Of a DNA stretch of 64,000 nt, positions 6,553 to 52,570 are shown in pieces. Position numbers and translations under genes: made by a program. Under the pieces are notes generated by a model. That model saw only the letters and a program-made list of their open reading frames with translations, ran no database searches and was not told the DNA's origin. Numbering within the stretch: the first letter of the stretch is position 1; each line of letters starts with the position of its first letter. The stretch comes from Oikopleura dioica. Lineage: Eukaryota > Animalia > Chordata. The stretch spans positions 11,160,001-11,224,000 of the forward strand of contig OU015568.1 of the NCBI GenBank assembly GCA_907165135.1. The letters are read 5' to 3'.

Positions 6553-8871
6553 ATGCGGCTTTTCAAGACTTTTAATGTTTTACTTTTGCATAACGCTGCA
6601 GCGCGTATGTCGGCTGCTGAAAGCAGCGACGACGGACTCAGAGGACTTCTCGATGTAGGACTTACATGCGAAGCCAACCAAGACACCCGATCAGCTCACA
6701 GAATCGTTGGAGGTACCGAAGCACAGCCTGCTTCTTGGCCATGGATCGTCCGATTCCCAATGATGGGCTGTGCTGGTTCCATCATCGGCCCACGAACAGT
6801 TGTCACCGCTGCTCATTGCTGTTTCACAACAAGTTTGGGTATCTACGACTTCGTAGCCGGAAAGCACAGCAGACTGGATAACTTGAATGCTGATCCTTTC
6901 ACCAGAAGATACAGAGCTTCTGCAGTGAAGAAACACCCAAGTTACACTAGCAGCACTTTTGAGAGCGACATTTGCTTGGTATTTACCAATGAAGACATTG
7001 ACTTCAACGACGCTGTTCAACCAGTTTGCTTGCCATCCGCACCCGTGGAAGTCCGCCAAGAGAACTGTTATGTCGCTGGTTGGGGCAGAACAAGCTGGAA
7101 TGGATTCCAGGCTTCCAAGCTCCTTGAGATCCCTGTCACTATCTACGACGTAGAGGGTGAGTGTAACCCTAACTACAGAGAGAATGGAAACACCCCGCTC
7201 ATTGAAGACGTAATGATCTGCGCCGGAAATATGGATGGTGGCATCGACGCGTGCCAGGGAGACAGTGGTGGACCGCTTGTCTGTCTCGAGGAGGGAAATC
7301 CTGTCATGCACGGTGTTGTCAGTTGGGGAGTCAAGTGCGCTCTCGCTGATTTGCCCGGTGTCTACACCAGAACCACTGCCATGCTCGACTGGATCCAAGC
7401 CATGCAATTCGAAGTTTTAGGCGAACCAGAAACTGGAACTGACGAAATTCTTTACGAACAAGTCGCAATTGAAGGTGGATTAACTGGCATGTCCTGTCTC
7501 GAAACCGAAGAAACTCGAATCATGGGAGGGCAAGAAGCTACTTACGGATCTTGGCCTTGGATGGGTCGACTTGAGAAGGGTTGCTCTGCTACTATCATTG
7601 GGCACAACGTTGCCTTGACTGCTGCTCATTGCTGCCAAGATCAAGGCTTGTGGTCATATGATATCCATGTTGGAGCACATCATTCCTTCGAGACGAATGC
7701 CGACAGCTGGCGCGATCATGTATGGGCGACAAAGGTAGTGCCTCATCCTGATTACGACCAAGTCACAAAGGATAATGACATTTGCCTGATCTTCTACCAG
7801 CAATCTTTCAACTGGTCTCAAGGAGTTCAACCCGCTTGTATCCCATCGGGTCCTTCTACCTCTGGCCGGAAATGCCATGTTGCTGGATGGGGTGCAAAGA
7901 GCGCTGATCCGAGTGCCAGCGGCTCGCACGTTCTTATGGAAGCCCAGATCAATATCTACAACAGCGATCAAGAATGCAAGCCTGCATTTGGCGCAAGTGA
8001 GGAGGCTTCTGCTGAAGGCGACGTTACTGACAACATGATCTGCGCTGGATGGAAAGAAGGTGGCGTTGATGCTTGCAATGGGGACTCTGGTGGACCTTTG
8101 GTTTGCGTGGAGGACGGCAAGCCCGTTGTAACTGGTATTGTCAGTTGGGGCTTCAAATGTGGTATCCCTAACTTCCCCTCGCTCTACACCGACGTCAGTA
8201 AGTACACAGACTGGATCAGAAAGGAGATCGAAGAGTCAAACGGGTGTGATAAAGACGACCTCGCCAAAATTCCTGGCGTAACCGGAGACGGTGAATGGGT
8301 CTGCGACGAGACCGAGTGCACCTGGACTTGCGAGGACGGGCATGCCACGGATGCTGTCACCAAATGTTCCAATAAACAATGGACCGCACTTACCACTGCA
8401 ATGAGAAAAACTGCCAGATGCGACAGGTGTAACATCGACATTTCGTCCGTCAAAACGTCTGAAGCCGCCCCTGCCGCACAATTGGATTGCTCGTTTAGCC
8501 GATCTGTCAAAACCTGCAAACTGAAGTGCCTTTCGGAAGACGGAACATTCGGCGATACTAATACTGAAGTTTTCTGTGACCGATCAAAAGCCAAGAATAG
8601 ATTTTCTCCCGTCAGAGGAAAGAGTGGAAATCTCAGCTGTGTCCCACTTTGTGACCGAAATGCTGTCTTTGAGCAGGTTCAAAAGAAATGGGGAGATGAT
8701 TTCGTTGCCGAAAACTTCAAAGACATGACATCCAAGCACCCAGTCTTCACCAAGATGAAATGCAATAATTCTAACAAGGTCTCAAAGAAAACCTTTATCC
8801 GATGCTCTGTCAACAGCAAAGGAGTTGAAAAAATCATCATCAAGGGTGATCCAAAAGATCCTAAATGCTAA
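6553..8871 (+). CDS. Secreted tandem trypsin-like serine protease (two S1 domains plus Cys-rich C-terminus; ovochymase-like layout)
   Basis: R-IVGG and R-IMGG activation sites. Both domains have TAAHC, DICL and GDSGGP, plus the S1-pocket Asp (IDAC/VDAC). Uninterrupted 772-aa ORF; true start uncertain. Confidence 0.9.
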   Translation: MRLFKTFNVLLLHNAAARMSAAESSDDGLRGLLDVGLTCEANQDTRSAHRIVGGTEAQPASWPWIVRFPMMGCAGSIIGPRTVVTAAHCCFTTSLGIYDFVAGKHSRLDNLNADPFTRRYRASAVKKHPSYTSSTFESDICLVFTNEDIDFNDAVQPVCLPSAPVEVRQENCYVAGWGRTSWNGFQASKLLEIPVTIYDVEGECNPNYRENGNTPLIEDVMICAGNMDGGIDACQGDSGGPLVCLEEGNPVMHGVVSWGVKCALADLPGVYTRTTAMLDWIQAMQFEVLGEPETGTDEILYEQVAIEGGLTGMSCLETEETRIMGGQEATYGSWPWMGRLEKGCSATIIGHNVALTAAHCCQDQGLWSYDIHVGAHHSFETNADSWRDHVWATKVVPHPDYDQVTKDNDICLIFYQQSFNWSQGVQPACIPSGPSTSGRKCHVAGWGAKSADPSASGSHVLMEAQINIYNSDQECKPAFGASEEASAEGDVTDNMICAGWKEGGVDACNGDSGGPLVCVEDGKPVVTGIVSWGFKCGIPNFPSLYTDVSKYTDWIRKEIEESNGCDKDDLAKIPGVTGDGEWVCDETECTWTCEDGHATDAVTKCSNKQWTALTTAMRKTARCDRCNIDISSVKTSEAAPAAQLDCSFSRSVKTCKLKCLSEDGTFGDTNTEVFCDRSKAKNRFSPVRGKSGNLSCVPLCDRNAVFEQVQKKWGDDFVAENFKDMTSKHPVFTKMKCNNSNKVSKKTFIRCSVNSKGVEKIIIKGDPKDPKC

Positions 8872-35607: not shown

Positions 35608-39885
<4,278 letters not shown>

Positions 39886-40597
39886 CTCTCGCTAGAATTT
39901 TCTGTAAGCGGTCTTGCTAAATCTCCATTTATTCTCGATTGAAAGCGCCGTCAGAAAAGGTAAAGAATAATAAAACGATAATATGAATTGAATTTACGAT
40001 CCGTTCAAATTCATCATTGTCTTTTCTCTGAAAAAGTAAAATTTGAGTTTGGCCCAATTTACGCCCTCGAGCATTTTTGGCATTGTATGAAAAGATAAAA
40101 TTATTTTCTCTTCATTCATTTCGTGAGTCATTCCTGTCTTACTCATTTCTCCAATCGTGACTAAAGAAAGAAAAAAAGGGAAATTGCAGATTTAAGATCT
40201 CAGAAACGTTCCACTACAGTAATTTCAGAGGGCCAATCAGATGAGAGAAAGAATTTTTAGAGCGCGCCACCCATCGATTTATCCCTATTTCTCGTGTGTG
40301 GTCCTTGATTTCTCAGAAAATGTCGTTAAAATCTCATTTATCTGCATAAATAACTTAATATTTTATTAAAAAAGACCCTTACCTGCTATCGCGTTATTGT
40401 ATTTTTCGGAATAGAGCAATCGCAATTGCTGAAGCAGACGAAATTCTATCCAGCTGGATGTTTTTCGAAGATGGTTTTTTCGACAATACCCAAATTTGGC
40501 TATTTATAAGCTCGAATCATTATTACTAGTTGTTGTGGACTGTGACAGCAGTTGACCTCAAACAACACTGAAAAAAGAGTTTTAAGATTGAATCGAA

Positions 40598-43500
40598 ATG
40601 GCAAGTTTTGGAACGTCTGGTAGTCTCGATTTGAAGGCTCACAAGATCGAGAAAATGGTCGATCCGGATGAGCCAGATCGAGAAAAAGAACTGGAGGAAA
40701 AACTGAAGGAAAATGAGCTAAAAGATAAAGCTTGGAGCTCAACAAAGAACCTCGACAAAGTCAAATACAGGCCTCGATGTGGAAAACCGATTGGACTGAA
40801 GTGGTATGGCGATGGGAAGAAAGATGACTCGGATGCTTTCGGTAGGAGAAAGAATTTCTTCCATGACTTCAAATTTTACATATAGTCTATATGATATATG
40901 ATATAGACAATCTTTACGATGACAAGGATTGGTTGCCAGTAGAAGAAGAAGATGATCGACTGGGAAAAGGATCAGACAAATACAGTATAAAGACAGTCAG
41001 TGTTACAGTCTCCACCGGTCAAAACTCCTCCCGTCAAGCCATGATTCCAGATAATCAAGTGAAACTAACACCTGGCTTTGATTTCATGTATGAATCGCCA
41101 CTTCTCCGCGATTTCGCTCTGGACCCAAATTCTGATCGTCGAGTTGCCAAAGATTTTCTGCGAGTAAGCTTCGATCGAAATACACCCGACTCCGTTGTAG
41201 GCAAGATTCTCAAAGATGGTTTCTACTGTCACGACCCGCACAATCAGAAAAACAAGAAAGATGCTCTCTGTTTATACCGCTTCTTTGCATACACGCCCTC
41301 ACAAGTCAGAAATCGAGGGTGCATCATGATCAACTACGATGCAGACTTCTGGGGCTCAGATAAGCTCGTTGATGTTGGGGACTACCGAAGATTGAAGAAA
41401 GAATTTGATGATTTGGAGAAAATACACGTGAAGGTTGACAAAGCTGAAGTGAGATACAGTCTTGTGAAAAGAGCGATTCCTTATGTTTGGAACTACTTTG
41501 GGAACTTTGATAAGATCAAAATTGTGTCTAAGTATGCTGCTCGAATTGGTCTTCTAATGTCGCCAACTCAGGCGACCATCTTTGTCCCAGATACAAAATG
41601 GGCCAGAGAAAGAGACATTGTTTGGGGCCCAGAAAAAGATCGAAAGAAGTATGAATTTACTGATGGTTGCGGACGAATGTCGACTCGTGTTGCTCAAATG
41701 TTTCGTGACAAGCTCAATCTCAAGCATTTGTATAAACATCAAGGAGCATACGGAGTACCATCTGTCATCCAGTTCCGAATGATGGGCTGCAAAGGCATCT
41801 TCGTCCATGATCCGACACTTGATGCTGCCAACCAGCCCTGGGTCATGATCCGGGACTCGCAGTGGAAATTCGATTGGAACATGGACACGGTCAAGTTCTT
41901 GGAACGAGATAAAGATGGGAATCCAGGGCGCGCAATGGGTGTTTGCTCTAACGGATTATCAAGGCCTTTTTCTTTTGGAAAACTGAATGAGCAGTTCGTG
42001 GTTTTGCTCGATTCTCTTGGGCTCGCGGACAATACATTCTTGGACATCCAAAAAGATCATTTCGAAAGGCTCAAACGATGTATGGACGACAGAATTGCAG
42101 CGTTTGAAATTCTCTCTTCTCAAAACCGCATGGCTGAAGCTGATCTTCTCCAAGAGACCGATGAAAACTCACCGTACCCACCAGAAGTTATCAACACCTT
42201 GAAGCGCTTCCGCAAGCCAGTTGTTGAACTGCCATCCAGCAACCCAAACGAAAGAGAGGAAAAGAACATCAAAAATGCAGCTTTTTACATCCCTATTTCG
42301 AAATCGAGAAACGTATACGGAGTCGCGGATATTTCAGGCAAACTCAAAAAAGGGCAATGTTTCGTTCAAGTCACTGACTACGTCGAAGAGTTTGATGAAA
42401 CAAAGGGGACAACAAGGAGAGTGACAAAAATGGTACCGTTGGACAACGGCGCTCGAGTACTTGTCAACAAATGCCCAACCTATCATCCTGGAGATTTCAG
42501 AGTTCTGGAGAACACGCACATTCCGGAACTGATGCACCTCTGCGATGTTATTGTTTTCCCTGTGGCAGGTCGACACAATCCTGATTTTAAGCGGCCACAT
42601 CCTCATGAGATGCACGAAAGGTACTTTTATTCCTCGGTTTTATATTAATGAGTGTTCAAAAGTGATTTGGATGGAGATGAATACTTCGTCAGTTGGGACG
42701 ACCGACTGATCCCCGAAAAGACAGACAAGCCTTTCCCGTGCCCAGACAAAACAAAAGGTGCAAACCAAAAGGAAGAGATCACAGTCCAAGATCTGATCCG
42801 TGAATTCACCGCTTCAGAGCACTTAGTTGGAAGGATCAATAATCTGTTCATCGACTGGGCGAAATTATCCGGAGCTAAATCAGACGAATGCAAGCAACTT
42901 GCGAAACTTTTCAATCAAGCTGTTGATACTGCAAAGCATGGTGGCAAAGTTGAAATATCATCGCACTTGACGGTAACTCTAGCGGCTAGAGTCAGCCTAA
43001 CCTATCTTGGTTTACAAAGTTTTTTTAGTCTGTTAAAGATAGAGATGGACAAAAGGTTCGCTTGCATGCAAAAATGGTTGCGCAAACGAAAAAACAACCA
43101 TTCAAAGCCTCCGCCGATTACCTCATCAGATACAAAGGACTCAACAATACTCTCTGGCCATTAGCTCAGAAGCCATTTTTTTATTTCATTGATATTAGCC
43201 TCTGCGATTCGGATTCAATGGTAGGCTTAATTTTAGAAATTAAAAAAATTAATATTGGTGTTAGATGAATTTTCACTGCATGCTGAAGTATGGCGTCTGG
43301 ACTGATCCCTACGAAAGAAATGTGACGAAGATTTCAGAGGCTTTCAACGCAACTCAGCGCCCAGGATCGGATAAAAAATCTCAATTCTTCTTTAACAAAT
43401 TACTTTTTCAATATCCAAAGAAAAGGGGCGATGGTACCGAACAATTCCATATTAAATGAGCGCGGCACAATTTATCTGATTGCCTACAGGGTCAAGAATA

Positions 43501-43985
43501 AGAAGAAATTCGCACAGGGTGTCGCACAAGTTATAGACAGAATCGGCATGTGGGAATACACATGGACGCCGTTTAAATACAGCGAACCAGGAATGATTCC
43601 TGTTCAATGGCTCTTCTGTAAAGACTTCGAAATTCCTGATTTGCCGATGTTTGGACACGAAGGAAAGAATTCGCTTCTTGACCTCGATCACACTGATCCA
43701 ATTCCTCAAAATATCGGCATGAAGCTTTTTGACAAATTCAAGAGAGGAAAGAACGCTGATCCGATGAGAAGGAAGTTAGGCGATAAATTATACGGGAAAA
43801 TGTAAGAAAGAACTTTTTGATCATTTTTAAATCGGTATCTTAGAAGCTATAAAGAAACACTCGTACAAACCAGTTATTTGGACAAGAAATGGGCCGAGAA
43901 TGAAAAAAATCTCCAAGAGAAAATCAAGAACAGCACAAAATTCTACGAAACCAATCAAAATACAAAATCTCGGAATCGGAAGTAG
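40598..43985 (+). CDS. Cellular RNA-dependent RNA polymerase (RDR/QDE-1/RRF family) with an in-frame C-terminal YTH-like domain
   Basis: RdRP motifs KYAARIG, FTDGCGRMS, PSVIQFRMMGCKG, KLNEQFVVLL, YGVADISGKLKKGQCFVQ, KCPTYHPGD, S|DLDGDEYFV, AVDTAKHG. Then GT-AG introns 42973-43028 and 43221-43264 (both phase 0) lead into a YTH-like region. Confidence 0.9.
43170..43745 (+). other. YTH-like domain coding segment of the RdRP gene
   Basis: FFYFIDIS..MLKYGVWT..NVTKISEAF..GTIYLI..QGVAQV..MWEYTW..GMIPVQWLFCKD..DHTDPIPQNIGMKLF follows the YTH consensus order. One GA-AG or GG-AG intron between about 43365 and 43460 is needed. Confidence 0.72.
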
Positions 43986-44227
43986 ACTGCCAGAAAGACA
44001 AACTTTCACTAACATGATCATTCACTAATAAAGGATAAAGTCATTCACAGAAATTTATATCATTCATTTCTGCAATCGCTACCTAGAAAAACTCAAACTC
44101 GGCGGGGAAGTGGTCGGAAATAAGCTCGGATATTGGTTAGGAAAAGCTGGAGAAATACTGAGAGTAGAAGTTACAAGTCATATTGATTTATTTCATTTTT
44201 GTAAGAAAGACTGTCGAATGTACATTT

Positions 44228-44968
44228 TAATTTGGCCAGTAGCTTTCCTTGTCGTAGGCGCAGTCGTTGGGATCTTGAGGAATGTTGAGAATTTCTGGTC
44301 TATCCCAAACGTCAGAAAAGCCTTTTGCGATTTCCATGAGTTCAGCCCATCGCTCTGGGTTGTTTTCCCGGATGTTCTGGTCTCACTCGAGCGAGAAGGA
44401 ACTTAAATTATTGCTAGAAGAGATCAGATTATTTATAATTACCCGAAGTCTTCGCAGTTCATGACAATCGAATATTCATCGTAGTTGGTATCCATGATCT
44501 AAAATGACTTTAAATCAAGACAAAACATGTGAAAACAGACCCAGTAGTTAGCTCGCTCATCTCTTGACTCAATGAGTTGGTATCCGTAGTCGAAATAGAC
44601 GAGAAGCTTGTTTGGGAAGTTGGCATCAAGAATCTTGGCGTTTCCGAGAATGCTCTGGAGTTCCAGGCCGCTGCCAGAGTTATCGCTGTACGGAATGATG
44701 TGGGAATTATTGACGGTGATGGTGGACGCATCGACGGGGCCGTACTCGGCGCCTCCGCATTTATCGTCGTCTCCAGAGAAAGAAACTGGAGTTCGAGCGT
44801 TTTCCCACCATTTACCGTAGTACTGAAAATTTATGAAATATTTAAAATTTGCAAAACACGTCTTACTCTGTCTAAGTCGAAGTCGGCGATGAGTGGAGGA
44901 CTGTAGCAGCTTTTTCCAAAGGAGATAAGCTGGGCATTAGCTGCTGAAAATAAAATTGCTGTCTTCAT
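44228..44968 (-). CDS. Lipocalin (apolipoprotein D-like); apparent in-frame TGA in last exon
   Basis: Signal peptide, FDLDR|YYGKWWENARTP (GxW motif), NYW|IMDTNYDEYSIVMNC (TDY-type motif). Confidence 0.75.
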
Positions 44969-45477
44969 CTTTTTTGTAATGATTTTGATGAACGAAGGGT
45001 TAGTTTTATTGAACTCGCCATCTGCGTTTTCCCAAGGTATAACTCCGCGTAACAGGTCTGGTGTTTTTGGGAACGAGTTCAATGAGGGTCAATTTTATGG
45101 CTTTAAAAATAGAATTGCATCAAATTAACGACAAGTTATGCAATAAAATGCTATGAGTTTAAACTTTAAAGTTCGTGAATTGACGTAAAAATGGCTCGTT
45201 TGGAATTTTTGCGTGGAAAGCGAAGAGACGAAGTGGAGGGATAGCTTCATCACATTTGCCACTGCAGTTTATCACATCTCATTTGCGCATAGAGTGTCTC
45301 TCACTAGGGTTTGATTTTTGCGCTTGTCTCTCTATCTCTCCATTTGCTCCTCGTTTGCGGTCCTCTAAGGTGTCCAGAGATAGCGAGTAAAATCACAAAT
45401 TTCTTCCCTGAGAAAAACCATAAATCTTGCACTTAGGAAATTGAATCAAAGAAGAGCAAGTCCCAAAAGCAGACACG

Positions 45478-46849
45478 ATGGAAGGTGGAGATGATTTTTT
45501 CAAGAAGCGCCTCGAGAAGGATTTGGCCGAACTCAAGAAAATGATCGACTCTCATTTCGGTAAATTATTATTTCTTTGGATTAAGTTTTATTAAAATTTT
45601 AATCATTTGTATTGAAAATTAATTATAAAACTCGAAACTTCACCGTGTGTTCACAGTTCAGCGGCAAAAGGATGAAGAGGAACTCGCTTCTCTTGAGAAG
45701 AAAATCGCTGAACGAAAAGAGGTACAGAAATGAACCCATAAAATTGATATTAAAAAAACCGACATTAGATGAGAGAACAGCAAAATGCCGAACGAGCTCG
45801 AAAGAATCAGGAAAGACGCGAGCGTGAACTCCGCGAAAAAGAGGCCAAAGCTTGGGCTCATAAATTTTTAATTATCAATGTCAAAAAATTTGAGATTTCG
45901 TTTATTTGGTACAATTAACACTTACTGAGCCGCAAACAAAGAAGCGGAAGAAGCACGTCGTCTGGAAGAAGAAGCACGAAAGAAGAAAGAAGCTATGGAT
46001 AAGCTCAACAAACTCAACAGGTTACACTTCCATCACTCATTTTACAACACCTCAAATGCGATAATTGTCGCACTCATAAAAAAGCCGAGTCAGTGAATGA
46101 TCGCGCTAGAATTTTGGATCTCTTCTTTTGACCTTGACGTCATATTTTGTCTTCCGCTTTGATACTCTTCAGCAATTTTCAGCTCGCTATCTAATTATAG
46201 CTCGGGTCCAAATTCTATGCGTTGAGACTATGTGCTTTTTGTGCTCTTATGTTTGTTCATAATACTCATCCTTGATTTCAGTGGTCAGCCAAGACAGCGA
46301 AAAGGCAAGGGTACTGCCCGAGATGTCAAAAAGAAGGTCCTTGCCGAACGACGAAAGCCTCTCAACATCGACCATATGGATCTTGATAAGCTCAAGCAGA
46401 AGGTCACCGAACTCTACGACTATCTTTCGGTAAGTCTCTTCCCTGAGTTATAAATTATAACCAGTGGGCTTTCACGTGGGACTACTGTAAGGCGGTTTTT
46501 GGTTTAAACTTTTTGGCACGCTTAGAAACAACGATCAGGCTTAGAACTCGTAAATAAAAGAGGAGCTTATGGCGATAAGTTGCTCTATAAGAGTCATCAG
46601 ATTGAGCCCTACAAGTAACAGATTTATGACTTTACACGTCAACATCAAGGAAGTGAATTTTCCTTTTATACACCAGAACATCGATTCATGTTTCATTAGA
46701 CCCTGGAAAACGAACGAGCCGACTTTGAAACCGACAACGACGAAAAGAAGTACGAAATGTCCACCCTCCGATACCGAGTCAATATGCTCTCCGGCGCCGC
46801 TTCAAAAGAAAAGACGAAACGAATCGGCCGAATTGGTGTCAAAAAATAA
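45478..46849 (+). CDS. Troponin T
   Basis: FKKRLEKDLAELKKMIDSHF|VQRQKDEEEL..; KKKVLAERRKPLNIDHM; KKYEMSTLRYRV. Confidence 0.9.
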
Positions 46850-46910
46850 ATTTTTACAGCATTGTGTTAATAAAAATCGAAGTGTATAATCTCGCATACA
46901 ACATCTGGAT

Positions 46911-49900
46911 TTATTCAGAAGGAGAATGAAGTGCAAAGAAAAAAATTGCCGACAAAATAAATAGTTTAGAGCGGCTATCTGGGCAATTTTCTTTTTCTTC
47001 GATAACGGGAGGTTGTGGTCGAGGGCCTCTAAGGCTATCATCCTCTATTTTATGGGAATCAAGATCAGTCTGGTTCGTGGTTTCTTCGTTTTTCACTTCT
47101 GTCAGTTACTTAATCGAGCGCAAAACGTATTCTTATTCATGCTGTGGTTGCAATTGCGGTTCCGTGGGTGAGCAAATCTCAACCGCCAAGTCCGTCATTA
47201 TTCTCAAAAATAGAGATTGACTTGTTTAATTTTGTAACTGGCCTAAATCAGTAGCAGAGGCTTCTCTCTCTTGACCCTCAAAATTCAACGAGTCCGGCGT
47301 GGGTGAACGTTCTCGCGGTGAATCGACATCTTTTCCTTCCGGTCTGGGCCCTCGCGGGCTTGGATCCTCCTCTTTCATCGAACTGGCCTCGCTATCCAAT
47401 TCACTGGACATTCTCGAGCTGGGAGTGGAGCTGTCTGAACACGTTCAATTTAAGAAGCTCAAGGAAACTATAGAATACCTGGCTGATCATAAGCTGCTTT
47501 GGTATCTTCATCGGAGGAAAGAGATAGAGATGATGACCTAGTTAAGCTGGACCTCGGAGTTGGCTCACTTTCATAGAATTCCTGAATTTCCCTTGCATAC
47601 ATTTTATGGTGCAGTTTACCTTGAGCATCAGTAAAATCATGACATTCTGCGTTTCAAAACCACCGAAAAGAGCTTCCGGGGTGGTTAAAAGATTCAGCTC
47701 GTGTCTTTCTGAAAATTTTACAATTTGAGTGCTTCTGTGTTGATCATTAGGTGGAACCTTGGGCTCCAAGTGCGTCCAAATGGGAGCTGATAATGTCAAA
47801 AGGGTCGCTCGCATTTTGATCGACAACGATCTTCCGGCCCCGCTCTAATTCGAGTGCTAAAGTCATTTCTTTGAAAATTTCTCTCGGCTGATGGCACGGC
47901 TGTTCTTACACGTTTTTATGTTCTTTAGAATCGAGCAAAGGATTTCTGGGTTCTTGAAGGACTCTCCAAAGTCGAAAACGGTTTGTCCCTCGTCCAGGAA
48001 TCTGTTTATCTTTCATAGGATTTTTAAGAATGAGCGCACTCGGAAGTCGCACTACAACCACATCCCGTATTTTAACGCAGTATACGTTTTTTTTCGATCT
48101 TATCAATTTTTGATAATAAGCTTAATTTAATGGCATTGTCCTTCGTATTTTAATAATTATTGAAAATCCTTGACCAAATGAGAAGACCTTGTTCGTCGAT
48201 AGAGCTGCTTAGTTCAACTTGCTCAACTTCCTTCTTTGTAATTTGCTCTTCTGATGCGCTTTCTGAATCTTAAATGCATATTTATTATCTATGCAACTAC
48301 GCATTCCATTTTGGGTTCTCATAAAGGGGGAAGTAGTTATTGAAATAGAAAACGCACGTCGGAAAATTGAACATGAAAACATCCACGACTGATCTCTTTG
48401 AGAACTTCTAACGCTGGCTTTCGCTTTGGGAAAAAAATTATAACCTGATTTTTCTTCTTCTTCTTCTTCTTCTTCGCCTTCAGACTCACTGTACTTTCCG
48501 AAGCCCTTTCCAAATTGCTTTTCGTATTGGGATTCAAAATTGAAGGGGTCGGATGGAGCATCGACGCGAGGAGTTTCTGGCTCTTCGATCTGAAAAATCA
48601 AGTGTCAATGAAGGATTGTTGCAAAAGAGCCCTTCTTGCTTGTCAATCGAGAATTCCCACAGTCTTTCAGTCGAAACGGGACGCGGACTTTTGTTGTAAA
48701 AGGGCCTTTTCTTGTAAATTTGAAAAAACACTAGATACGCCAAAATAACACTCCTTATATATTTTTTTCGAATTGAATGACTCTTTTAACGTCATTCTTT
48801 AGCGTTTAAAATATTTTTTTTCGAAAAAAATTAAAATTTGAGAATTTTCAAAAATTTGTTTTTGCTATAAAATTGTCTCTGAGGTGTCAAAAAGATACAT
48901 TTCCGTATCAAATGACTTAAAACATGCTAAACTTTCGTTTCAGATGCTTTCTTTACGTTTTATCCCTCTAGAAAAAAACTCTTCAAATTTACAAGAAAAG
49001 GCACTTTTACAAGAAAAATCCGCATCCCAGTCGAAACCACGCGAACCAAATTAAACAGCTACTTATGTTGTAGCGTGAAAGTGAACACCGTATTTTCCCG
49101 TTACATGAACTTCTTTTTTTTTTAATAGAAAATATCGTTATCATTTTAAAGAAAATCGGAAGAAATCTTCATGTGGTTTTAATTATCAACGGTTTCTCGA
49201 CTTGTTTGCCGTCGTATAAATTTACAGTTTTTTTCCATCTTAAGAGGCCCCAACTTAAGAGGACTTTTGCGTCAATTTGGCCGATTTTGTCACCCTGAAA
49301 AATTCCAACTTAAGAGGACTTTCTCGATAATTTTTATTAATTTTTAGAAAATTTTTCTGCTAACAGTGAATCAATTGAAATTTTTTTTAGCAGTAAAAAA
49401 GCTAGAAATCTTTGACTGCTTTTCTGGCCATTTTGAAGTCGATGGCTTTGCAATGTCAGCTTCATCTGAAACTTGAATTTGCGGTTCTTCCTCAATATCT
49501 ATCGGGGTTGCAGCTTGTGTTTCATCGATTTGAAGCGCCAGGAAATGCTCGATCAATTCTTCTTCATCTTGTTTCTCCAAGATACTTTCCAAAACGTCCA
49601 AGCCCTCGACTTCTTCAACAGTATCCTTGTATTCTTCTTCTTTGATCAATCCCGTATTGATCCAACTTCGCTTGAAGATTCCAGGGTTCATGTTCATGAA
49701 GATTTCGTTGGCTTTTTTCACGAGCTCTTCCTCCTTGATATTCAGATGATCGTGATCGACAATAAAATCATCGAGGAAGCAGCGGATTTTCTTCTTAAAA
49801 TTACAAAAAACAAGATTATCGCAGGGTTGGTATACACCTTCTTTTGTTTGAAAATAAATTTTATATTTTTCGCGCAAAGATAAAAATAACACTGATCAAA

Positions 49901-52570
49901 CTTTTCCTGTAGTCCCTGGTCGAAAAAAACACAAGTCCAGATTTTTGAACTTTGGAAGAAGCTTGTGAGCAGGGCAGTTATCGATATACATCAAATAACG
50001 CTGCGATGGATTTTTTTCTTTCAAAAAAGTCGAAAGACGAGTCAGCTCCAGAATAAATATCGGTCTTGTACACCAGGCGGAGGGATTCCAGTAAAGTCGA
50101 AAATCTCAAAATAAATAAGCTTGGTTTTTTTTCAATTTTTACCTTTAAAATCTCTGAATTCTACTTCATGATATTGGAGATTTTTAGGGGAAGAGGGCTT
50201 GGTTTCGTCATAGTTCGGGTTGGCCACTCGTTCGATCTGTTTTCTTGGGGCACTTTGCCACTTACTTCCTTGATTTCGTGTAATTATTGCAGGGCGGTAA
50301 TCTTTTAGCGGCCCAAACACATTTATAGTCGGAATAAATGTAAACCGCTCTTTTTGATGAGCGATTTTTGACAGTTGATCATCAGATCCAAGCAAGATAC
50401 GATTACGCGTGTCGATCTCTCGGTTGACGCCCGTTTCGTCACAGTTTAAAATAGCACTTTAATATAATAATTGCAAAAATAAATGATAATTTCTCACCTC
50501 AATGGATATTTAGAACGACAGGCTCGTAAACGCTGAATTTCAAAATTTTTCTCATCTTCAGTGAGATATACAACATCAGTGTTTTTCGAGGTTTTTCGTC
50601 CATAATCACGAATAATTCGTGTGACAAAGCGTGAAGAAATACACAGATTTTGTATCTCTTTGTCTTCGGGAAAGTTTTCATCAATCATTTTTCGCAACCA
50701 TCTTGCAGCTCCACGAAGTTTCATTTTATGTTGGCGTTGAGGGTAAAGTTCCTTGATTTTTCTTCTAGCTTCTGCATTGATGAAGATTTCTTCTGTGTTA
50801 GTTGAAATTTATGCTTCGATTTCGATGACAGGATCGTAAACCTTTTGTTATAAAGGTTTGTAAATGTACACTTCGGGATATCGTGTCCATGTTGCTTTCG
50901 GTACAGATCATTTACAGCCTTTTTAGCATTCCTCTTGTTCGCACCATTCACCAAAATCTCTGCATACTTCTTTTTCTCTGCCATCGTCATGTGAATTCTC
51001 TTTTCGGACATGTTTCCAGCAAAATATGTTTCGAGGAATGAATTAGTAAAAATTAAAAACATGGGCGCGTGCCTTGTTCTGGAAATAATCATAGCCTTGT
51101 TAATATTCGATCTTTCAGTGGAAAAACCAAATTTTAACTTCTCTGTTGTTGTGTGGCTTTAAAATTAGTGAGAAGAGAATTTTAAGATATGTATACCTGG
51201 CTCGACTCAAAAATTTCCAACTTAAGAGGACTTTTTCTTGGCCCTTGTAATCTCAAAAGGCCTCTAAAGATGGAAAAAAACTGTATATCATGTAATAGTG
51301 GTTAAAGTCGCTCTAGGAACGCGTATCTTATCAACCAGGGGACTATCATTTTTGAATACCTGGTCTGGCACCACGGTATCTTGCCGAGTCAGTGCTTTGA
51401 AATCACTGTACTGCTCAGCAGTGAGAGACTCGGCTCGATTTCGTTGCTGCTCGCTTTCTGGCTCTTCGTCAATAATTATTTGAGATTCCAAAGGCTCAAC
51501 GCCTAGTTGGTCGAGTTCTTCTTCCAATACTTTGACAATTTTGTGGTAAACTTGCATACCGTGCGTTTTCTAAAACAAAAAAGTTTTCACGAAACAGTAC
51601 AGTCAATATTTCAGGCTCTACTGTTCCAAAAATTGATGGTCAATTTATGCGTCCAATTTTCCTGAATTTGCATAAACCATGAGACGGTTTTACGTACAAA
51701 ACATGAAAAATTCTCCTTTTTTAAGGATATACCCGATAAAATTGAACTTTCATAGCGCCTAAATACGAAGTCGGATCATTTTTATTTCAAAAGCAATCCT
51801 ACCTAAAATTGTGCGTTAAATTAAATTATGGTACTTTTTTAGAAATTTTCATTAGAATTTTCCTCTCTAGAGCGATTTGAAAATGAACTCTCTCGATTTC
51901 TCGAAATGTTTCCACTAAATTGCTAAAACTGAACCGTATTCTGTATTGCAATGATGCTAAGCTACAAGATTGATGGGATCAAATTCTTAAACTCGATCGA
52001 ATTTTTATTCTAGTGTTCTCTTCTTTTATACCCTTGTTTTTCTTCTCTGCGCGTTTTTTCGCGTGCTACCAATCAGAGCGGTGCGCTCAACCACGCACTT
52101 TCTCTCGGAAAAGAGGAGTCGAGTGAGTGAGCTCCCAGCGCGCCGCTTTGTAGAGCTTTTACGCGCTGAGTAGCCCTCAATGAAATGGCTCTAGAATCGG
52201 TTTCCTTCGGAATTAACGAAAAGTAAACCATCAAAATTGTACATAATGGTCTAAAGAACTTATATATCGAAAATTCTCGACCGATTTATACAAAAAATTT
52301 CGAGTAATCGAGAGAGTAAGATTTGAAATCGCTCTAAAGAGAAAAATTCAAATGAAAAAATTTAAAGAATTACCAGATTTGAGTTCTACGTGCATTTTAA
52401 CGTAGAATTGCTTTTGAAATATAAATGATCCTACGTCGCATTTCGGCGCTATAAAAGTTCAATTTTATCGGGTATATCCTTAAATAGCTGAGGAAATACC
52501 TTGGTAAACTCGACAAGTTCTTTGTCCGTTTCCACTTCAAAGTCATTCGATTCGCCGAGAGCTAAGATAA
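46911..52570 (-). CDS. Uncharacterised multi-exon gene with acidic low-complexity exons and transposon-filled introns
   Basis: Open exons with AG/GT boundaries at about 52500-52570, 51361-51570, 48445-48592, 47226-47430 and 46990-47100; RGPRP motif twice; poly-Glu run. Model incomplete. Confidence 0.45.
48678..49028. mobile_element. Non-autonomous Mutator-like MITE (351 bp)
   Basis: 9-bp TSD AGTCGAAAC (48669-48677 and 49029-49037); ~50-bp imperfect TIR GGGA(C/T)GCGGA.TTTT.TTGTAAAAG.GCCTTTTCTTGTAAATTTGAA. Confidence 0.85.
49225..51283 (-). mobile_element. pogo-like (Tc1/mariner superfamily) DNA transposon, 2059 bp
   Basis: TA TSD; 25-bp TIR CAGTTTTTTTCCATCTT(A/T)AGAGGCC with 1 mismatch; subterminal CCAACTTAAGAGGACTTT repeats; contains a transposase gene. 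Confidence 0.92.
49371..51011 (-). pseudogene. pogo-type DDD transposase with three short introns and one apparent frameshift
   Basis: NCDETG, YIDNCPAH and PGTT|GVYQPCD (about DD30D); C-terminal FKRSWINTG. One A is missing in the A-run near 50757-50763 (GAAGAAAAATCAAGG). Confidence 0.8.
51725..52479. mobile_element. Non-autonomous element with TTAA TSD and GG..CC ends (Kolobok-like), 755 bp
   Basis: TTAA|GGATATACCCGATAAAATTGAAC ... GTTCAATTTTATCGGGTATATCC|TTAA, with about 200 bp of imperfect inverted repeat. Confidence 0.8.

What the first reader, a model, noticed from the sequence alone, without database searches (positions are those of the whole stretch)
40891..42960. Intron-containing cellular RdRP in an apparent tunicate, with an atypical pre-catalytic loop
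Seen: a complete RDR-type core with a 42-nt GT-AG intron (42621-42662) just before DLDGD, so this is a resident spliced gene. The usual SG(S/G)DLDGD reads HESDLDGD, and there is an insert (RHNPDFK) before RPHP. Established: cellular RdRPs are absent from vertebrates and patchy across animals, and O. dioica is known for dsDNA-triggered gene silencing (DNAi). Inference: this is a candidate amplifier for DNAi or transposon silencing, possibly with altered active-site geometry.
Basis: partly seen in the sequence, partly recalled or inferred. Interest (0 to 1): 0.72.

Follow-up and report, generated by a model that had tools for sequence, protein, structure and literature searches.

The report
Oikopleura RdRP fused to YTH domain
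This is a real, spliced and expressed gene of the tunicate Oikopleura dioica for a cellular RNA-copying enzyme (RdRP) that, unlike any relative found here, carries a YTH domain (the fold that reads methylated RNA) at its tail and an unusual His-Glu-Ser in front of its catalytic site; what it does in the animal is untested.

Summary
Window 40891-42960 holds most of exons 2-3 of a 7-exon gene (CDS 40598-43985, + strand). It is O. dioica OKI2018_I69 g11656, already named 'RNA-dependent RNA polymerase' in NCBI/UniProt.

- **RdRP core:** Pfam PF05183 scores E 1e-91, DLDGD is intact, and the AlphaFold model (pLDDT 88) matches plant RDR2 and QDE-1.
- **Intron:** the 42-nt GT-AG intron is exactly at 42621-42662 and lies at the same position in the Norwegian lineage.
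- **Expression:** the mRNA carries the O. dioica spliced leader in a plankton metatranscriptome.
- **Atypical loop:** HES-DLDGD and the 6-aa insert are real. Glu replaces a Gly found in all 39 other aligned RdRPs. HES occurs in all 14 cores of the clade, which I take to be appendicularian, and in no other of 214 cores.
- **Selection:** synonymous sites between the two O. dioica lineages are saturated, while pN is about 0.08-0.09.
- **New here:** the C-terminal ~170 aa is a divergent YTH domain, so this is an RdRP-YTH fusion.
- **Origin:** trees place the core with crinoid, amphioxus and coral RdRP-helicase genes. A deuterostome clade is not rejected (p-AU 0.67); a fungal one is (p 0.013).

A role in DNAi or siRNA amplification remains pure inference. 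This scan noted the YTH reading on this same stretch (s1-393132) and a second RdRP gene elsewhere in this genome (s1-411145).

The parts
40585..40586 (+). AG acceptor for spliced-leader trans-splicing; the mature mRNA starts at 40587, 11 nt before the ATG
   Evidence: A metatranscriptome contig (X1) is 100% identical to 40585-40814 and is preceded by 19 loose letters. Together with AG these equal the last 21 nt of the 40-nt O. dioica SL given in PMC6883708.
40598..40841 (+). Exon 1 coding part (aa 1-81 plus 1 nt): charged N-terminus with no known domain
   Evidence: The translation is found in P0043 at residue 1. There is no Pfam hit.
40842..40885 (+). Intron 1, 44 nt GT..AG; an alternative acceptor at 40906 gives a 65-nt intron and removes 7 aa (VYMIYDI)
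   Evidence: The two annotated isoforms P0043 and P0042 differ by exactly these 7 aa.
40886..42620 (+). Exon 2: N-terminal region plus most of the RdRP core, up to ..RPHPHEMHE
   Evidence: aa 83-659. PF05183 E 2.7e-67.
42571..42591 (+). RHNPDFK: lineage-specific loop insertion (6 aa relative to other RdRPs) between FPVAG and RPHP
   Evidence: HMMER alignment to RDR2 and the 45-sequence alignment. The length varies within the clade (2-7 aa). AF2 pLDDT is about 91 over this block.
42613..42620 (+). His-Glu and the first two nt of Ser, at positions -3 to -1 before DLDGD
   Evidence: Position -2 is Gly in 39 of 39 non-clade sequences and Glu in 6 of 6 clade sequences. HES occurs in 14 of 214 cores, all from the clade.
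42621..42662 (+). Intron 2, 42 nt GT..AG, phase 2, directly before the catalytic motif
   Evidence: The same position is used in the Norwegian genome locus L005. RNA-seq reads of the other lineage read ..PHPHEMHE|SDLDGD.. without interruption.
42663..42972 (+). Exon 3: catalytic DLDGD (42664-42678) and the C-terminal part of the RdRP core
   Evidence: PF05183 E 2.8e-17. (aa 661-763). D661, D663 and D665 are invariant in alignments A1 and A4.
42973..43028 (+). Intron 3, 56 nt GT..AG
   Evidence: Reads of the other lineage join ..KHLT|SVRDRE...
43029..43220 (+). Exon 4: helical linker and first strand of the YTH domain (FFYFIDI)
43221..43264 (+). Intron 4, 44 nt GT..AG
43265..43364 (+). Exon 5: YTH helix 1 region (MNFHCMLKYGVW). 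It holds Asn and Trp at the positions of YTHDF1 D401 and W411.
43365..43425 (+). Intron 5, 61 nt, non-canonical GA..AG
   Evidence: It is the only junction that reproduces ..QRPG|AMVPNN... The Norwegian locus also uses GA..AG here.
43426..43801 (+). Exon 6: rest of the YTH domain (..PFKY..IPVQWLFCKDF..)
43802..43843 (+). Intron 6, 42 nt GT..AG
   Evidence: X1 contig 2 begins to match exactly at 43844.
43844..44038 (+). Exon 7: C-terminal helix, stop codon at 43983-43985, 3' UTR with AATAAA at 44027-44032
   Evidence: X1 contig 2 covers 43844-44038.
36117..39818 (-). Neighbouring ABC transporter gene (not part of the system; shows host context)
   Evidence: Pfam ABC_membrane and ABC_tran. The same neighbour lies upstream in the Norwegian genome.

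Best explanation
**Shown.** The finding is the catalytic heart of a resident, expressed O. dioica gene with 7 exons, whose mRNA is SL trans-spliced. The gene encodes a 1032-aa, two-module protein: a cellular two-barrel RdRP core (aa ~170-762) and a divergent DF-type YTH domain (aa ~810-970). The core descends from the animal RdRP lineage that in crinoids, amphioxus and corals is fused to a UPF1-like SF1 helicase. In a clade of six proteins that I take to be appendicularian (only the O. dioica members are named), the helicase is absent and a YTH domain is present instead. Both modules are under purifying selection.

**Inferred.** The enzyme is an active polymerase: all three catalytic Asp and the other 16 family-invariant residues are kept. 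The clade-wide A/S-Gly to His-Glu change and the loop insert beside the catalytic Asp loop tune, rather than abolish, catalysis. The YTH domain acts as the template selector. It tethers the polymerase to RNAs carrying N6-methyladenine or a comparable mark or motif. The core then copies these RNAs into complementary RNA. The resulting dsRNA or antisense RNA is handed to the Dicer and Argonaute genes that other, unchecked notes of this scan report in this genome. Whether this feeds DNAi, transposon control or antiviral defence is open.
For: - **Identity and gene model:**
- **RdRP family and fold:**. Foldseek against maize RDR2 gives E 6.5e-30, TMq 0.66.
- **Expression:** a contig carrying the SL tail; RNA-seq reads of the other lineage that cross the junctions; and a full-length intron-less mRNA contig, L004, encoding 1033 aa.
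- **Residency:** the same intron positions, including the GA..AG intron, and the same upstream neighbour in the Norwegian genome.
- **Selection:** pS 0.63-1.0 against pN 0.08-0.09 for core exons 2-3 and 0.07-0.23 for exons 4-7 (linker, YTH and tail).
- **YTH:** profile A2 hits only YTH chains in the PDB, the best being YTHDF1 at E 4e-5. For the AF2 model, all top 50 Foldseek hits are YTH domains, prob 1.0, TMt up to 0.74. Asn/Asp stands at the YTHDF1 D401 position, Trp at W411 and Tyr/Phe at W465.
- **Origin:** the best non-clade hits are crinoid (525 bits) and amphioxus (416 bits). In the IQ-TREE LG+C20 tree the clade sits in a 21-row group (support 88/89) with crinoid, amphioxus and coral sequences. 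Constraining it with the crinoid and amphioxus sequences gives a log-likelihood 5 higher, p-AU 0.67. Constraining it with fungi is rejected, p 0.013.
- **No helicase and no YTH elsewhere:** no helicase-like sequence in the window, and no YTH signal in any non-clade RdRP fetched.
Against: - No polymerase activity, RNA product or small RNA was examined.
- Glu replaces a Gly that is otherwise invariant two residues before the first catalytic Asp, so altered or reduced catalysis cannot be excluded.
- The Pfam YTH model itself does not hit the domain.
- The third aromatic cage residue (YTHDF1 W470) falls in a 3-residue deletion. The YTH model is only of moderate confidence (pLDDT 66). m6A binding is therefore uncertain.
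- Whether O. dioica makes m6A at all was not established.
- In amphioxus, the nearest relative that has been studied, no RdRP-type siRNAs were found (PMC6396948).
- Read depth in three poly(A) runs of the sister lineage is low, at most about 6 in any 121-nt bin.
Confidence: 0.5

Rival explanations
1. Classical secondary-siRNA amplifier. Argonaute-targeted transcripts recruit the RdRP, which makes 5'-triphosphate secondary siRNAs or long dsRNA. This powers the DNA-induced silencing (DNAi) and transposon silencing of O. dioica. The YTH domain is accessory.
For: - DNAi exists in O. dioica (PMC5345011).
- The catalytic triad is intact and the core is conserved.
- Dicer and Argonaute genes are reported in this genome by other notes of this scan (unchecked).
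- A second RdRP paralog exists, and P0120-like reads appear in an O. dioica RNA run.
Against: - The core is not in the clade that holds the plant RDR-type reference sequence; the split has 100/100 support.
- The one functional study of the amphioxus branch of its lineage saw no amplification signature (PMC6396948).
- Neither the DNAi paper that I read nor the two hits of each Oikopleura+RdRP search links an RdRP to DNAi.
Confidence: 0.2
2. DNA-templated mode, as in QDE-1. The enzyme also copies single-stranded DNA into aberrant RNA and then into dsRNA, so that injected DNA directly becomes a silencing trigger. The YTH domain might read N6-methyladenine on single-stranded nucleic acid.
For: The PDB holds QDE-1 complexes with DNA templates, and these are structural matches of the core model (7y7r, 7y7s, 7y7t, E about 1e-22 to 3e-23). 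DNAi is triggered by PCR products (PMC5345011).
Against: - The core is nearer to RDR2 than to QDE-1.
- PCR products carry no adenine methylation, so a methyl-reader is not needed for DNAi.
- Nothing in the sequence speaks for DNA templates.
Confidence: 0.1
3. Active polymerase with a role outside small-RNA silencing, as proposed for amphioxus RdRPs. One example would be making antisense RNA or dsRNA on YTH-selected mRNAs to control their stability or translation in the germ line.
For: The nearest named relatives include amphioxus, where RdRPs are conserved and expressed without detectable siRNA products (PMC6396948). Fusion to a DF-type YTH, the fold of mRNA-fate regulators, points the same way.
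Against: No positive evidence for any such pathway in any animal.
Confidence: 0.15
4. Catalytically crippled scaffold. The Gly-to-Glu change next to the metal-binding Asp loop has inactivated or re-purposed the site, and the protein works as an RNA-binding adaptor.
For: Glu stands at a position that is Gly in 39 of 39 other aligned RdRPs. In the census of 214 cores, the only other core with Glu there is one with SES.
Against: - DLDGD and all 19 invariant core residues are kept.
- pN is about 0.08-0.09 in the core against saturated pS.
- HES itself is invariant across proteins only 41-54% identical overall, which is the pattern of a working site.
- AF2 models the loop at pLDDT above 90.
Confidence: 0.05

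Closest known systems
Animal RdRP-SF1 helicase fusion genes (Branchiostoma belcheri KAI8492821/XP_019625576, of the same architecture as B. lanceolatum BL02069 of Pinzon et al. 2019; crinoids Anneissia XP_033122012 and Antedon XP_071941136; Acropora XP_044168746)
   Same: The RdRP core is 35-41% identical, and these are the best non-clade hits. They group with the clade in the site-heterogeneous tree and are compatible with one deuterostome clade. They share the same ..FPxxG..RPHxxE..DLDGD.. frame.
   Different: - They carry AGS before DLDGD and no loop insert.
- They have a C-terminal UPF1-like helicase (AAA_11/AAA_12) and no YTH. The Oikopleura protein has YTH and no helicase.
- The phase-1 intron that amphioxus and crinoid share in the Gly codon of FPxxG is absent in Oikopleura. 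That spot is where the insert sits.
Plant RDR2 (Arabidopsis 7eu0/7roz, maize 7w82/7w84)
   Same: Same fold: Foldseek E 6.5e-30, TMq 0.66, 27% identity. HMMER E 1.6e-34 over aa 283-759. DLDGD is shared.
   Different: It belongs to a separate clade, with the split supported 100/100. RDR2 has SGG before DLDGD, no insert and no YTH. From my own knowledge, RDR2 has an N-terminal RNA-recognition motif and works coupled to Pol IV.
Neurospora QDE-1 (2j7n, 7y7p-t)
   Same: Two-barrel catalytic fold (Foldseek E about 2e-23).
   Different: Much more distant in sequence (E 1e-7 to 1e-10).
YTHDF-type YTH domains (human YTHDF1-3; yeast MRB1/Pho92)
   Same: Same fold: top 50 Foldseek hits, TMt up to 0.74. 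The profile-to-sequence match is E 4e-5. The D401 equivalent (Asn/Asp), the W411 equivalent (Trp) and an aromatic residue at W465 are kept.
   Different: Only 12-18% identity, and it is missed by the Pfam YTH model. The W470 loop is shortened. The domain is fused to a polymerase, whereas YTHDF proteins have (from my own knowledge) a low-complexity effector region.

Membership tests
Eukaryotic cellular RdRP (Pfam PF05183, two-barrel polymerases) | Significant match to the family profile over most of its length | tested here: met
   308.5 bits against a cut-off of 23.8, profile positions 28-546 of 582.
Eukaryotic cellular RdRP (Pfam PF05183, two-barrel polymerases) | Catalytic DxDGD loop with three Asp | tested here: met
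   DLDGD at aa 661-665, window 42664-42678. Invariant in A1 and A4.
Eukaryotic cellular RdRP (Pfam PF05183, two-barrel polymerases) | Fold of solved RDR2/QDE-1 catalytic cores | tested here: met
   AF2 pLDDT 88.3. Foldseek 7w82 E 6.5e-30, QDE-1 E 2e-23.
Eukaryotic cellular RdRP (Pfam PF05183, two-barrel polymerases) | Small residues (A/S/T then Gly) at positions -3 and -2 before the first catalytic Asp; near-invariant, not formally defining | tested here: not met
   His-Glu instead. Gly in 39 of 39 non-clade sequences. Of 214 cores, the only Glu at -2 outside the clade is one SES core.
Eukaryotic cellular RdRP (Pfam PF05183, two-barrel polymerases) | RNA-templated RNA synthesis | not testable with these tools
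   Needs recombinant protein.
siRNA-amplifying RdRPs (nematode RRF-1/EGO-1, plant RDR6 type) | Membership of the same subfamily | tested here: inconclusive
   The clade holding the plant reference (P0244) is separated 100/100 from the clade holding the query. No labelled nematode, RDR6 or alpha/beta/gamma reference sequences were available.
siRNA-amplifying RdRPs (nematode RRF-1/EGO-1, plant RDR6 type) | RdRP-dependent small RNAs (5'-triphosphate, or antisense across exon junctions) | not testable with these tools
   No small-RNA data were examined.
Animal RdRP-SF1 helicase fusion lineage | RdRP core groups with crinoid, amphioxus and coral members | tested here: met
   21-row group with support 88/89. 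AU test p 0.67, with a better likelihood when constrained. The fungal alternative is rejected, p 0.013.
Animal RdRP-SF1 helicase fusion lineage | C-terminal UPF1-like helicase (AAA_11/AAA_12) | tested here: not met
   No helicase in P0043 or anywhere in the window.
YTH domain (PF04146) | Match to the Pfam family model | tested here: not met
   No hit at E up to 0.1 for the exon pieces, P0054 or P0043.
YTH domain (PF04146) | Homology to solved YTH domains by profile and by fold | tested here: met
   11 of the 12 PDB profile hits are YTH-domain proteins by their molecule name (YTHDF1-3, MRB1, Z. rouxii MRB1); the best is E 4e-5. The top 50 Foldseek hits are all YTH, prob 1.0.
YTH domain (PF04146) | Aromatic cage for N6-methyladenine (YTHDF1 W411, W465, W470) plus D401/N367-type contact | tested here: inconclusive
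   Trp at W411 (Phe in P0073). Tyr/Phe at W465. W470 lies in a 3-residue deletion. Asn/Asp at D401. The residue numbers of human YTHDF1 are from memory.
YTH domain (PF04146) | Binding of m6A RNA | not testable with these tools
   Needs binding assays.

The most novel reading that the evidence does not exclude
A reader-guided RNA polymerase. The YTH module recognises N6-methyladenine (on RNA, or on single-stranded foreign DNA) and so chooses what the fused RdRP copies. This would turn an epitranscriptomic or foreign-nucleic-acid mark directly into dsRNA silencing triggers. It would be the missing upstream step of Oikopleura's DNA-induced silencing, and a replacement of the ancestral helicase module by a reader module.
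Probability: 0.15. Interest if true: 0.9.

Novelty: new variant of a known kind. Interest (0 to 1): 0.62.

Why it matters
Tunicates are the closest living relatives of vertebrates, which lack cellular RdRPs. What RdRPs do in animals outside nematodes is an open question.

This gene shows that a fast-evolving chordate has kept an RdRP under strong constraint. Another note of this scan reports a second RdRP gene in the same genome. In this lineage the helicase that accompanies the enzyme in crinoids, amphioxus and corals is absent and a YTH reader domain is present. I found no such architecture among the 300 relatives fetched, nor in the papers that my one search for YTH plus RdRP returned.

The architecture gives a concrete, testable hypothesis for template choice. 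It also gives an obvious candidate to knock down when dissecting DNAi in O. dioica.

The His-Glu replacement next to the catalytic loop is a natural variant of a position that is otherwise invariant in the family. That makes it useful for structure-function work on two-barrel RdRPs.

Tried and rejected
**Searches that gave nothing**
- Pfam on the N-terminus and on the C-terminal pieces gave no hit. YTH was found only by a clade profile and by fold.
- The word search with a family alignment was capped at 8000 candidates and added little.
- The word search restricted to the YTH part returned nothing, not even known clade members, so it is uninformative.
- The ESM Atlas feature search only repeated 'RdRP'.

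**RNA reads**
- The three raw-read O. dioica runs belong to the other (Norwegian-like) lineage, about 75% nucleotide identity. Only conserved patches mapped and the joints table stayed empty.
- Junctions were read from the loose ends instead, and from the mRNA contig L004.

**Literature**
- Each of the two Oikopleura+RdRP searches returned the same two papers; their titles and abstracts, and the one Oikopleura passage I read, do not concern a cellular RdRP of Oikopleura.
- The main text and held supplements of PMC6396948 do not mention tunicates.
- The DNAi paper PMC5345011 does not mention RdRP, Dicer or Argonaute.
- The Oikopleura/m6A search was swamped by unrelated papers.

**Shared-intron test of vertical descent: negative.** Amphioxus and crinoid share a phase-1 intron in the Gly codon of FPxxG. 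Oikopleura lacks it and has its own phase-2 intron 17 codons further on.

**Readings rejected**
- Contaminant or recent horizontal transfer: six short introns of 42-65 nt, SL trans-splicing, conserved structure and upstream neighbour in two lineages, and the AU tests.
- Pseudogene: intact frame, pN far below pS, expressed.
- Homology between the coral-type middle region and YTH: one aligned Trp in A1, but no profile signal even at E 10.

**Not achieved**
- An alpha/beta/gamma label could not be assigned, because no labelled reference sequences of those subfamilies could be obtained.
- The species behind P0003, P0073, P0120 and P0006 are unknown. I call them 'appendicularian clade' by inference from their kinship and their marine plankton sources.
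Full report
**What is there.** The window is Oikopleura dioica, Okinawa assembly OKI2018_I69. The translation of 40891-42618 is 100% identical to cluster representative P0001. Two members of that cluster are NCBI proteins CAG5087879.1 (P0043, 1032 aa) and CAG5087881.1 (P0042, 1025 aa), gene g11656 on the 'PAR' sequence, which UniProt calls 'RNA-dependent RNA polymerase'. So the gene is already in public databases under an automatic name.

None of my literature searches turned up a paper that discusses it. Two Oikopleura+RdRP searches each returned the same two unrelated papers. The animal RdRP survey PMC6396948 does not mention tunicates in its text or held supplements. The DNAi paper PMC5345011 mentions neither RdRP, Dicer nor Argonaute.

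**Gene model.** I checked the model exon by exon against P0043 without building a joined sequence. Every in-frame exon translation is a substring of P0043, and the lengths add up to 3099 nt.

| Exon (CDS part) | Following intron | Intron length and type |
|---|---|---|
| 40598-40841 | 40842-40885 | 44 nt GT..AG (65 nt with the alternative acceptor at 40906, giving the 7-aa shorter isoform) |
| 40886-42620 | 42621-42662 | 42 nt GT..AG |
| 42663-42972 | 42973-43028 | 56 nt GT..AG |
| 43029-43220 | 43221-43264 | 44 nt GT..AG |
| 43265-43364 | 43365-43425 | 61 nt GA..AG (non-canonical) |
| 43426-43801 | 43802-43843 | 42 nt GT..AG |
| 43844-43985 (includes the stop codon) | none | none |

It is needed, because the exon-2 frame otherwise stops at 42648 and DLDGD lies in another frame.

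**Expression and residency.**
- *Spliced leader.* A contig from an oligo-dT marine plankton metatranscriptome is 100% identical to 40585-40814. It is preceded by 19 letters that, together with the AG at 40585-86, equal the last 21 nt of the 40-nt O. dioica spliced leader printed in PMC6883708. The mature mRNA is therefore SL trans-spliced 11 nt before the ATG.
- *Last junction.* A second contig starts to match exactly at exon 7 (43844) and runs to 44038, past an AATAAA at 44027-32.
- *Sister lineage.* Three O. dioica poly(A) RNA-seq runs come from the other, Norwegian-like lineage, and only conserved patches map. Their loose ends read ..KRPHPHEMHE directly followed by SDLDGD.., and ..KHLT followed by SVRDRE...
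- *Full-length mRNA.* An intron-less 3152-nt contig (L004) is 99-100% identical to the Norwegian genome locus L005 (FN653384.1). It spans all seven exons as one 1033-aa ORF.
- *Conserved structure.* L005 has the same seven exons, an intron at the same place before SDLDGD, and the same GA..AG intron 5. The same ABC transporter gene lies upstream.
- *Selection.* Per exon, synonymous differences between the two lineages are saturated (pS 0.63-1.0). pN is 0.089 and 0.077 in core exons 2 and 3, and 0.07-0.23 in exons 4-7.

This is a long-resident, constrained host gene. It is not a contaminant, a recent transfer or a pseudogene.

**The polymerase core.**
- Pfam PF05183 scores 308.5 bits on P0043.
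- HMMER against PDB sequences gives maize and Arabidopsis RDR2 at E about 1e-34 and QDE-1 at 1e-7 to 1e-10.
- An AF2 model of aa 230-775, built with 44 relatives, has mean pLDDT 88.3 and pTM 0.88.
- Foldseek returns RDR2 (E 6.5e-30, TMq 0.66, 27% identity), then QDE-1, then phage and multisubunit RNA polymerases.
- All 19 columns that are invariant across 45 diverse cores, including D-L-D-G-D, are present.

**The atypical loop.** In the 45-sequence alignment, position -2 before the first catalytic Asp is Gly in all 39 sequences outside the query's clade and Glu in all 6 inside it. Position -3 is Ala/Ser/Thr outside and His inside.

Among 214 cores fetched, the three residues before DLDGD (DMDGD in one core) are distributed as follows:

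| Tripeptide | Cores |
|---|---|
| AGS | 108 |
| SGG | 41 |
| SGS | 26 |
| HES | 14 (all from the clade) |
| SES | 1 (P0293) |
| other or no match | 24 |

The insert between FPVAG and RPHP is 6 residues here, 7 in the Norwegian lineage, 6 in P0003 and P0120, and 2 in P0073 and P0006. AF2 models both the insert and the catalytic loop at pLDDT 91-96. I could not inspect coordinates, so 'altered geometry' remains open.

From my own knowledge of the related two-barrel multisubunit polymerases (NADFDGD motif), position -2 there is an Asn that contacts the ribose at the active site. A carboxylate here could plausibly affect substrate or metal handling. That is inference.

HES is invariant among proteins only 41-54% identical overall. 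That argues for a working, re-tuned site rather than a dead one.

Downstream exons 4-7 encode about 270 further residues that are conserved in the clade. Pfam sees nothing there. A profile of the clade's tails hits 12 PDB sequences at E up to 10. Eleven are YTH-domain proteins by name, with YTHDF1 the best at E 4e-5. The AF2 model (pLDDT 66, core blocks 78-91) gives YTH domains as all top 50 Foldseek matches, prob 1.0, TMt up to 0.74.

In the HMMER alignment three pocket positions are kept. The YTHDF1 numbering is from memory.
- Asn stands at the position of YTHDF1 D401 (Asp in two clade members).
- Trp stands at W411 (Phe in one member).
- Tyr/Phe stands at W465.

W470 falls in a 3-residue deletion. 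The protein is thus an RdRP-YTH fusion. The reads and the mRNA contig above show both parts on one transcript. The GenBank split of the Norwegian gene into CBY14941 and CBY14942 is therefore a mis-annotation.

**Relatives and origin.** A full HMMER scan of 1.84 billion representatives with a clade profile gave 3300 hits at E up to 0.001. I ran this search because the questions of origin and of uniqueness rest on relatives beyond the reach of the word search.
- Outside the clade, the best hits are the crinoid Anneissia japonica (525 bits), Branchiostoma belcheri (416 bits), P0027 and P0030 (unnamed; P0030 groups with Acropora in the trees), and the crinoid Antedon (names).
- Most of these are 1500-2300 aa proteins with a C-terminal UPF1-like SF1 helicase. 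B. lanceolatum BL02069, which has an AAA_12 domain in PMC6396948, has the same architecture.
- None of the non-clade proteins fetched has a YTH-like signal, even at E 10. No helicase-like sequence occurs in the window.

Trees:
- A FastTree of 146 cores puts the clade as sister to the 86-row group that holds all the helicase-fused cores, about half of its rows.
- Under the site-heterogeneous model (IQ-TREE LG+C20 PMSF, 61 rows, 431 columns) the clade has 100/100 support and a long stem of 1.05.
- In that tree it sits inside a 21-row group (88/89) with crinoids, amphioxus and corals. It is apart from the fungal helicase-type group and from the plant-type clade, which splits off at 100/100.
- Holding the clade together with the crinoid and amphioxus sequences gives a log-likelihood 5.06 higher than the free tree (p-AU 0.67).
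- Holding it with the fungal group costs 39 log units (p-AU 0.013).

The data therefore fit vertical descent from a deuterostome RdRP-helicase gene with strong acceleration, and they reject a fungal source. They do not prove vertical descent. Several neighbouring rows are unnamed, and the group was chosen after seeing the first tree.

**Intron test.** Amphioxus (L006) and crinoid (L007) share a phase-1 intron in the Gly codon of FPxxG. Oikopleura has no intron there, and its own intron lies 17 codons downstream in phase 2. The Oikopleura insert sits exactly at that ancestral intron site. This may hint at its origin by intron loss or exonisation, but that is speculation.

**Mechanism.**
- *Shown:* an intact, constrained, expressed two-module protein.
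- *Inferred:* it polymerises RNA on RNA templates. The YTH module replaces the ancestral helicase as the template-engaging part and directs the enzyme to marked RNAs. The product is complementary RNA or dsRNA that can enter the Dicer/Argonaute machinery. Other notes of this scan report those genes in this genome (unchecked).

DNAi is real in this animal (PMC5345011), and QDE-1 complexes with DNA templates are among the structural matches in the PDB. But nothing here tests it, and the only functional data on the amphioxus branch of this lineage found no amplification signature (PMC6396948). I give the YTH-guided active polymerase reading about 0.5, and the specific DNAi or siRNA-amplifier roles 0.1-0.2 each.

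**Rules followed.** I built and searched no joined exon model of my own. Whole-protein searches used database proteins by id (P0043 and others), and window sequence went in exon by exon by reference.

**Verdict.** The RdRP gene as such is already annotated. The clade-wide His-Glu-Ser site, the loss of the helicase and the fusion to a YTH domain make it a new variant of a known kind, of good but not exceptional interest until function is tested.

Noticed in passing
window 43029-43985 (exons 4-7): The C-terminal domain is a divergent YTH fold. The GenBank models of the Norwegian lineage split the gene in two (CBY14941 and CBY14942), although one mRNA contig (L004) covers both parts.
   Followed up: yes
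window 43365-43425: Non-canonical GA..AG intron (61 nt). The Norwegian lineage also uses GA..AG at this intron (L005, about 6721-6796).
   Followed up: yes
window 40842-40906: Two alternative acceptors, 21 nt apart (40885 and 40906), give isoforms with or without VYMIYDI. Reads of the Norwegian-like lineage show the short form.
   Followed up: partly
window 41863-41896 (reads of run X6): Five reads of an O. dioica RNA-seq run match here only over a short conserved stretch. Their flanks read QPWVVLRDSQ.. and ..GELSSTGER, which fits P0120/P0137, a 45%-identical RdRP-YTH protein with a long Asn/Lys-rich tail. This is probably a second, paralogous RdRP-YTH gene of O. dioica. The scan reports another RdRP gene on another piece of this genome (s1-411145).
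   Followed up: partly
L006:2082-2448 and L007:2315-2570, compared with window 42565-42591: Amphioxus and crinoid RdRP-helicase genes share a phase-1 intron in the Gly codon of FPxxG. The Oikopleura loop insert (RHNPDF) sits at exactly that position, and Oikopleura has no intron there. The insert may have arisen by intron loss or exonisation.
   Followed up: partly
P0161 (Anneissia japonica XP_033122012): The predicted crinoid protein has two RdRP cores (aa 145-589 and 1042-1376). This is either a tandem duplication or two neighbouring genes fused by the gene predictor.
   Followed up: no
window 44080-50000 compared with L005:7438-10167: The downstream neighbour of the Norwegian locus (an Exo_endo_phos gene on the minus strand) is not found downstream in the Okinawa window, whereas the upstream ABC transporter is collinear. 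The local gene order has been rearranged between the two lineages.
   Followed up: partly
window 36117-39818, minus strand: Multi-exon ABC transporter gene (Pfam ABC_membrane and ABC_tran) arranged head to head with the RdRP gene, with about 780 nt between the two coding starts.
   Followed up: partly
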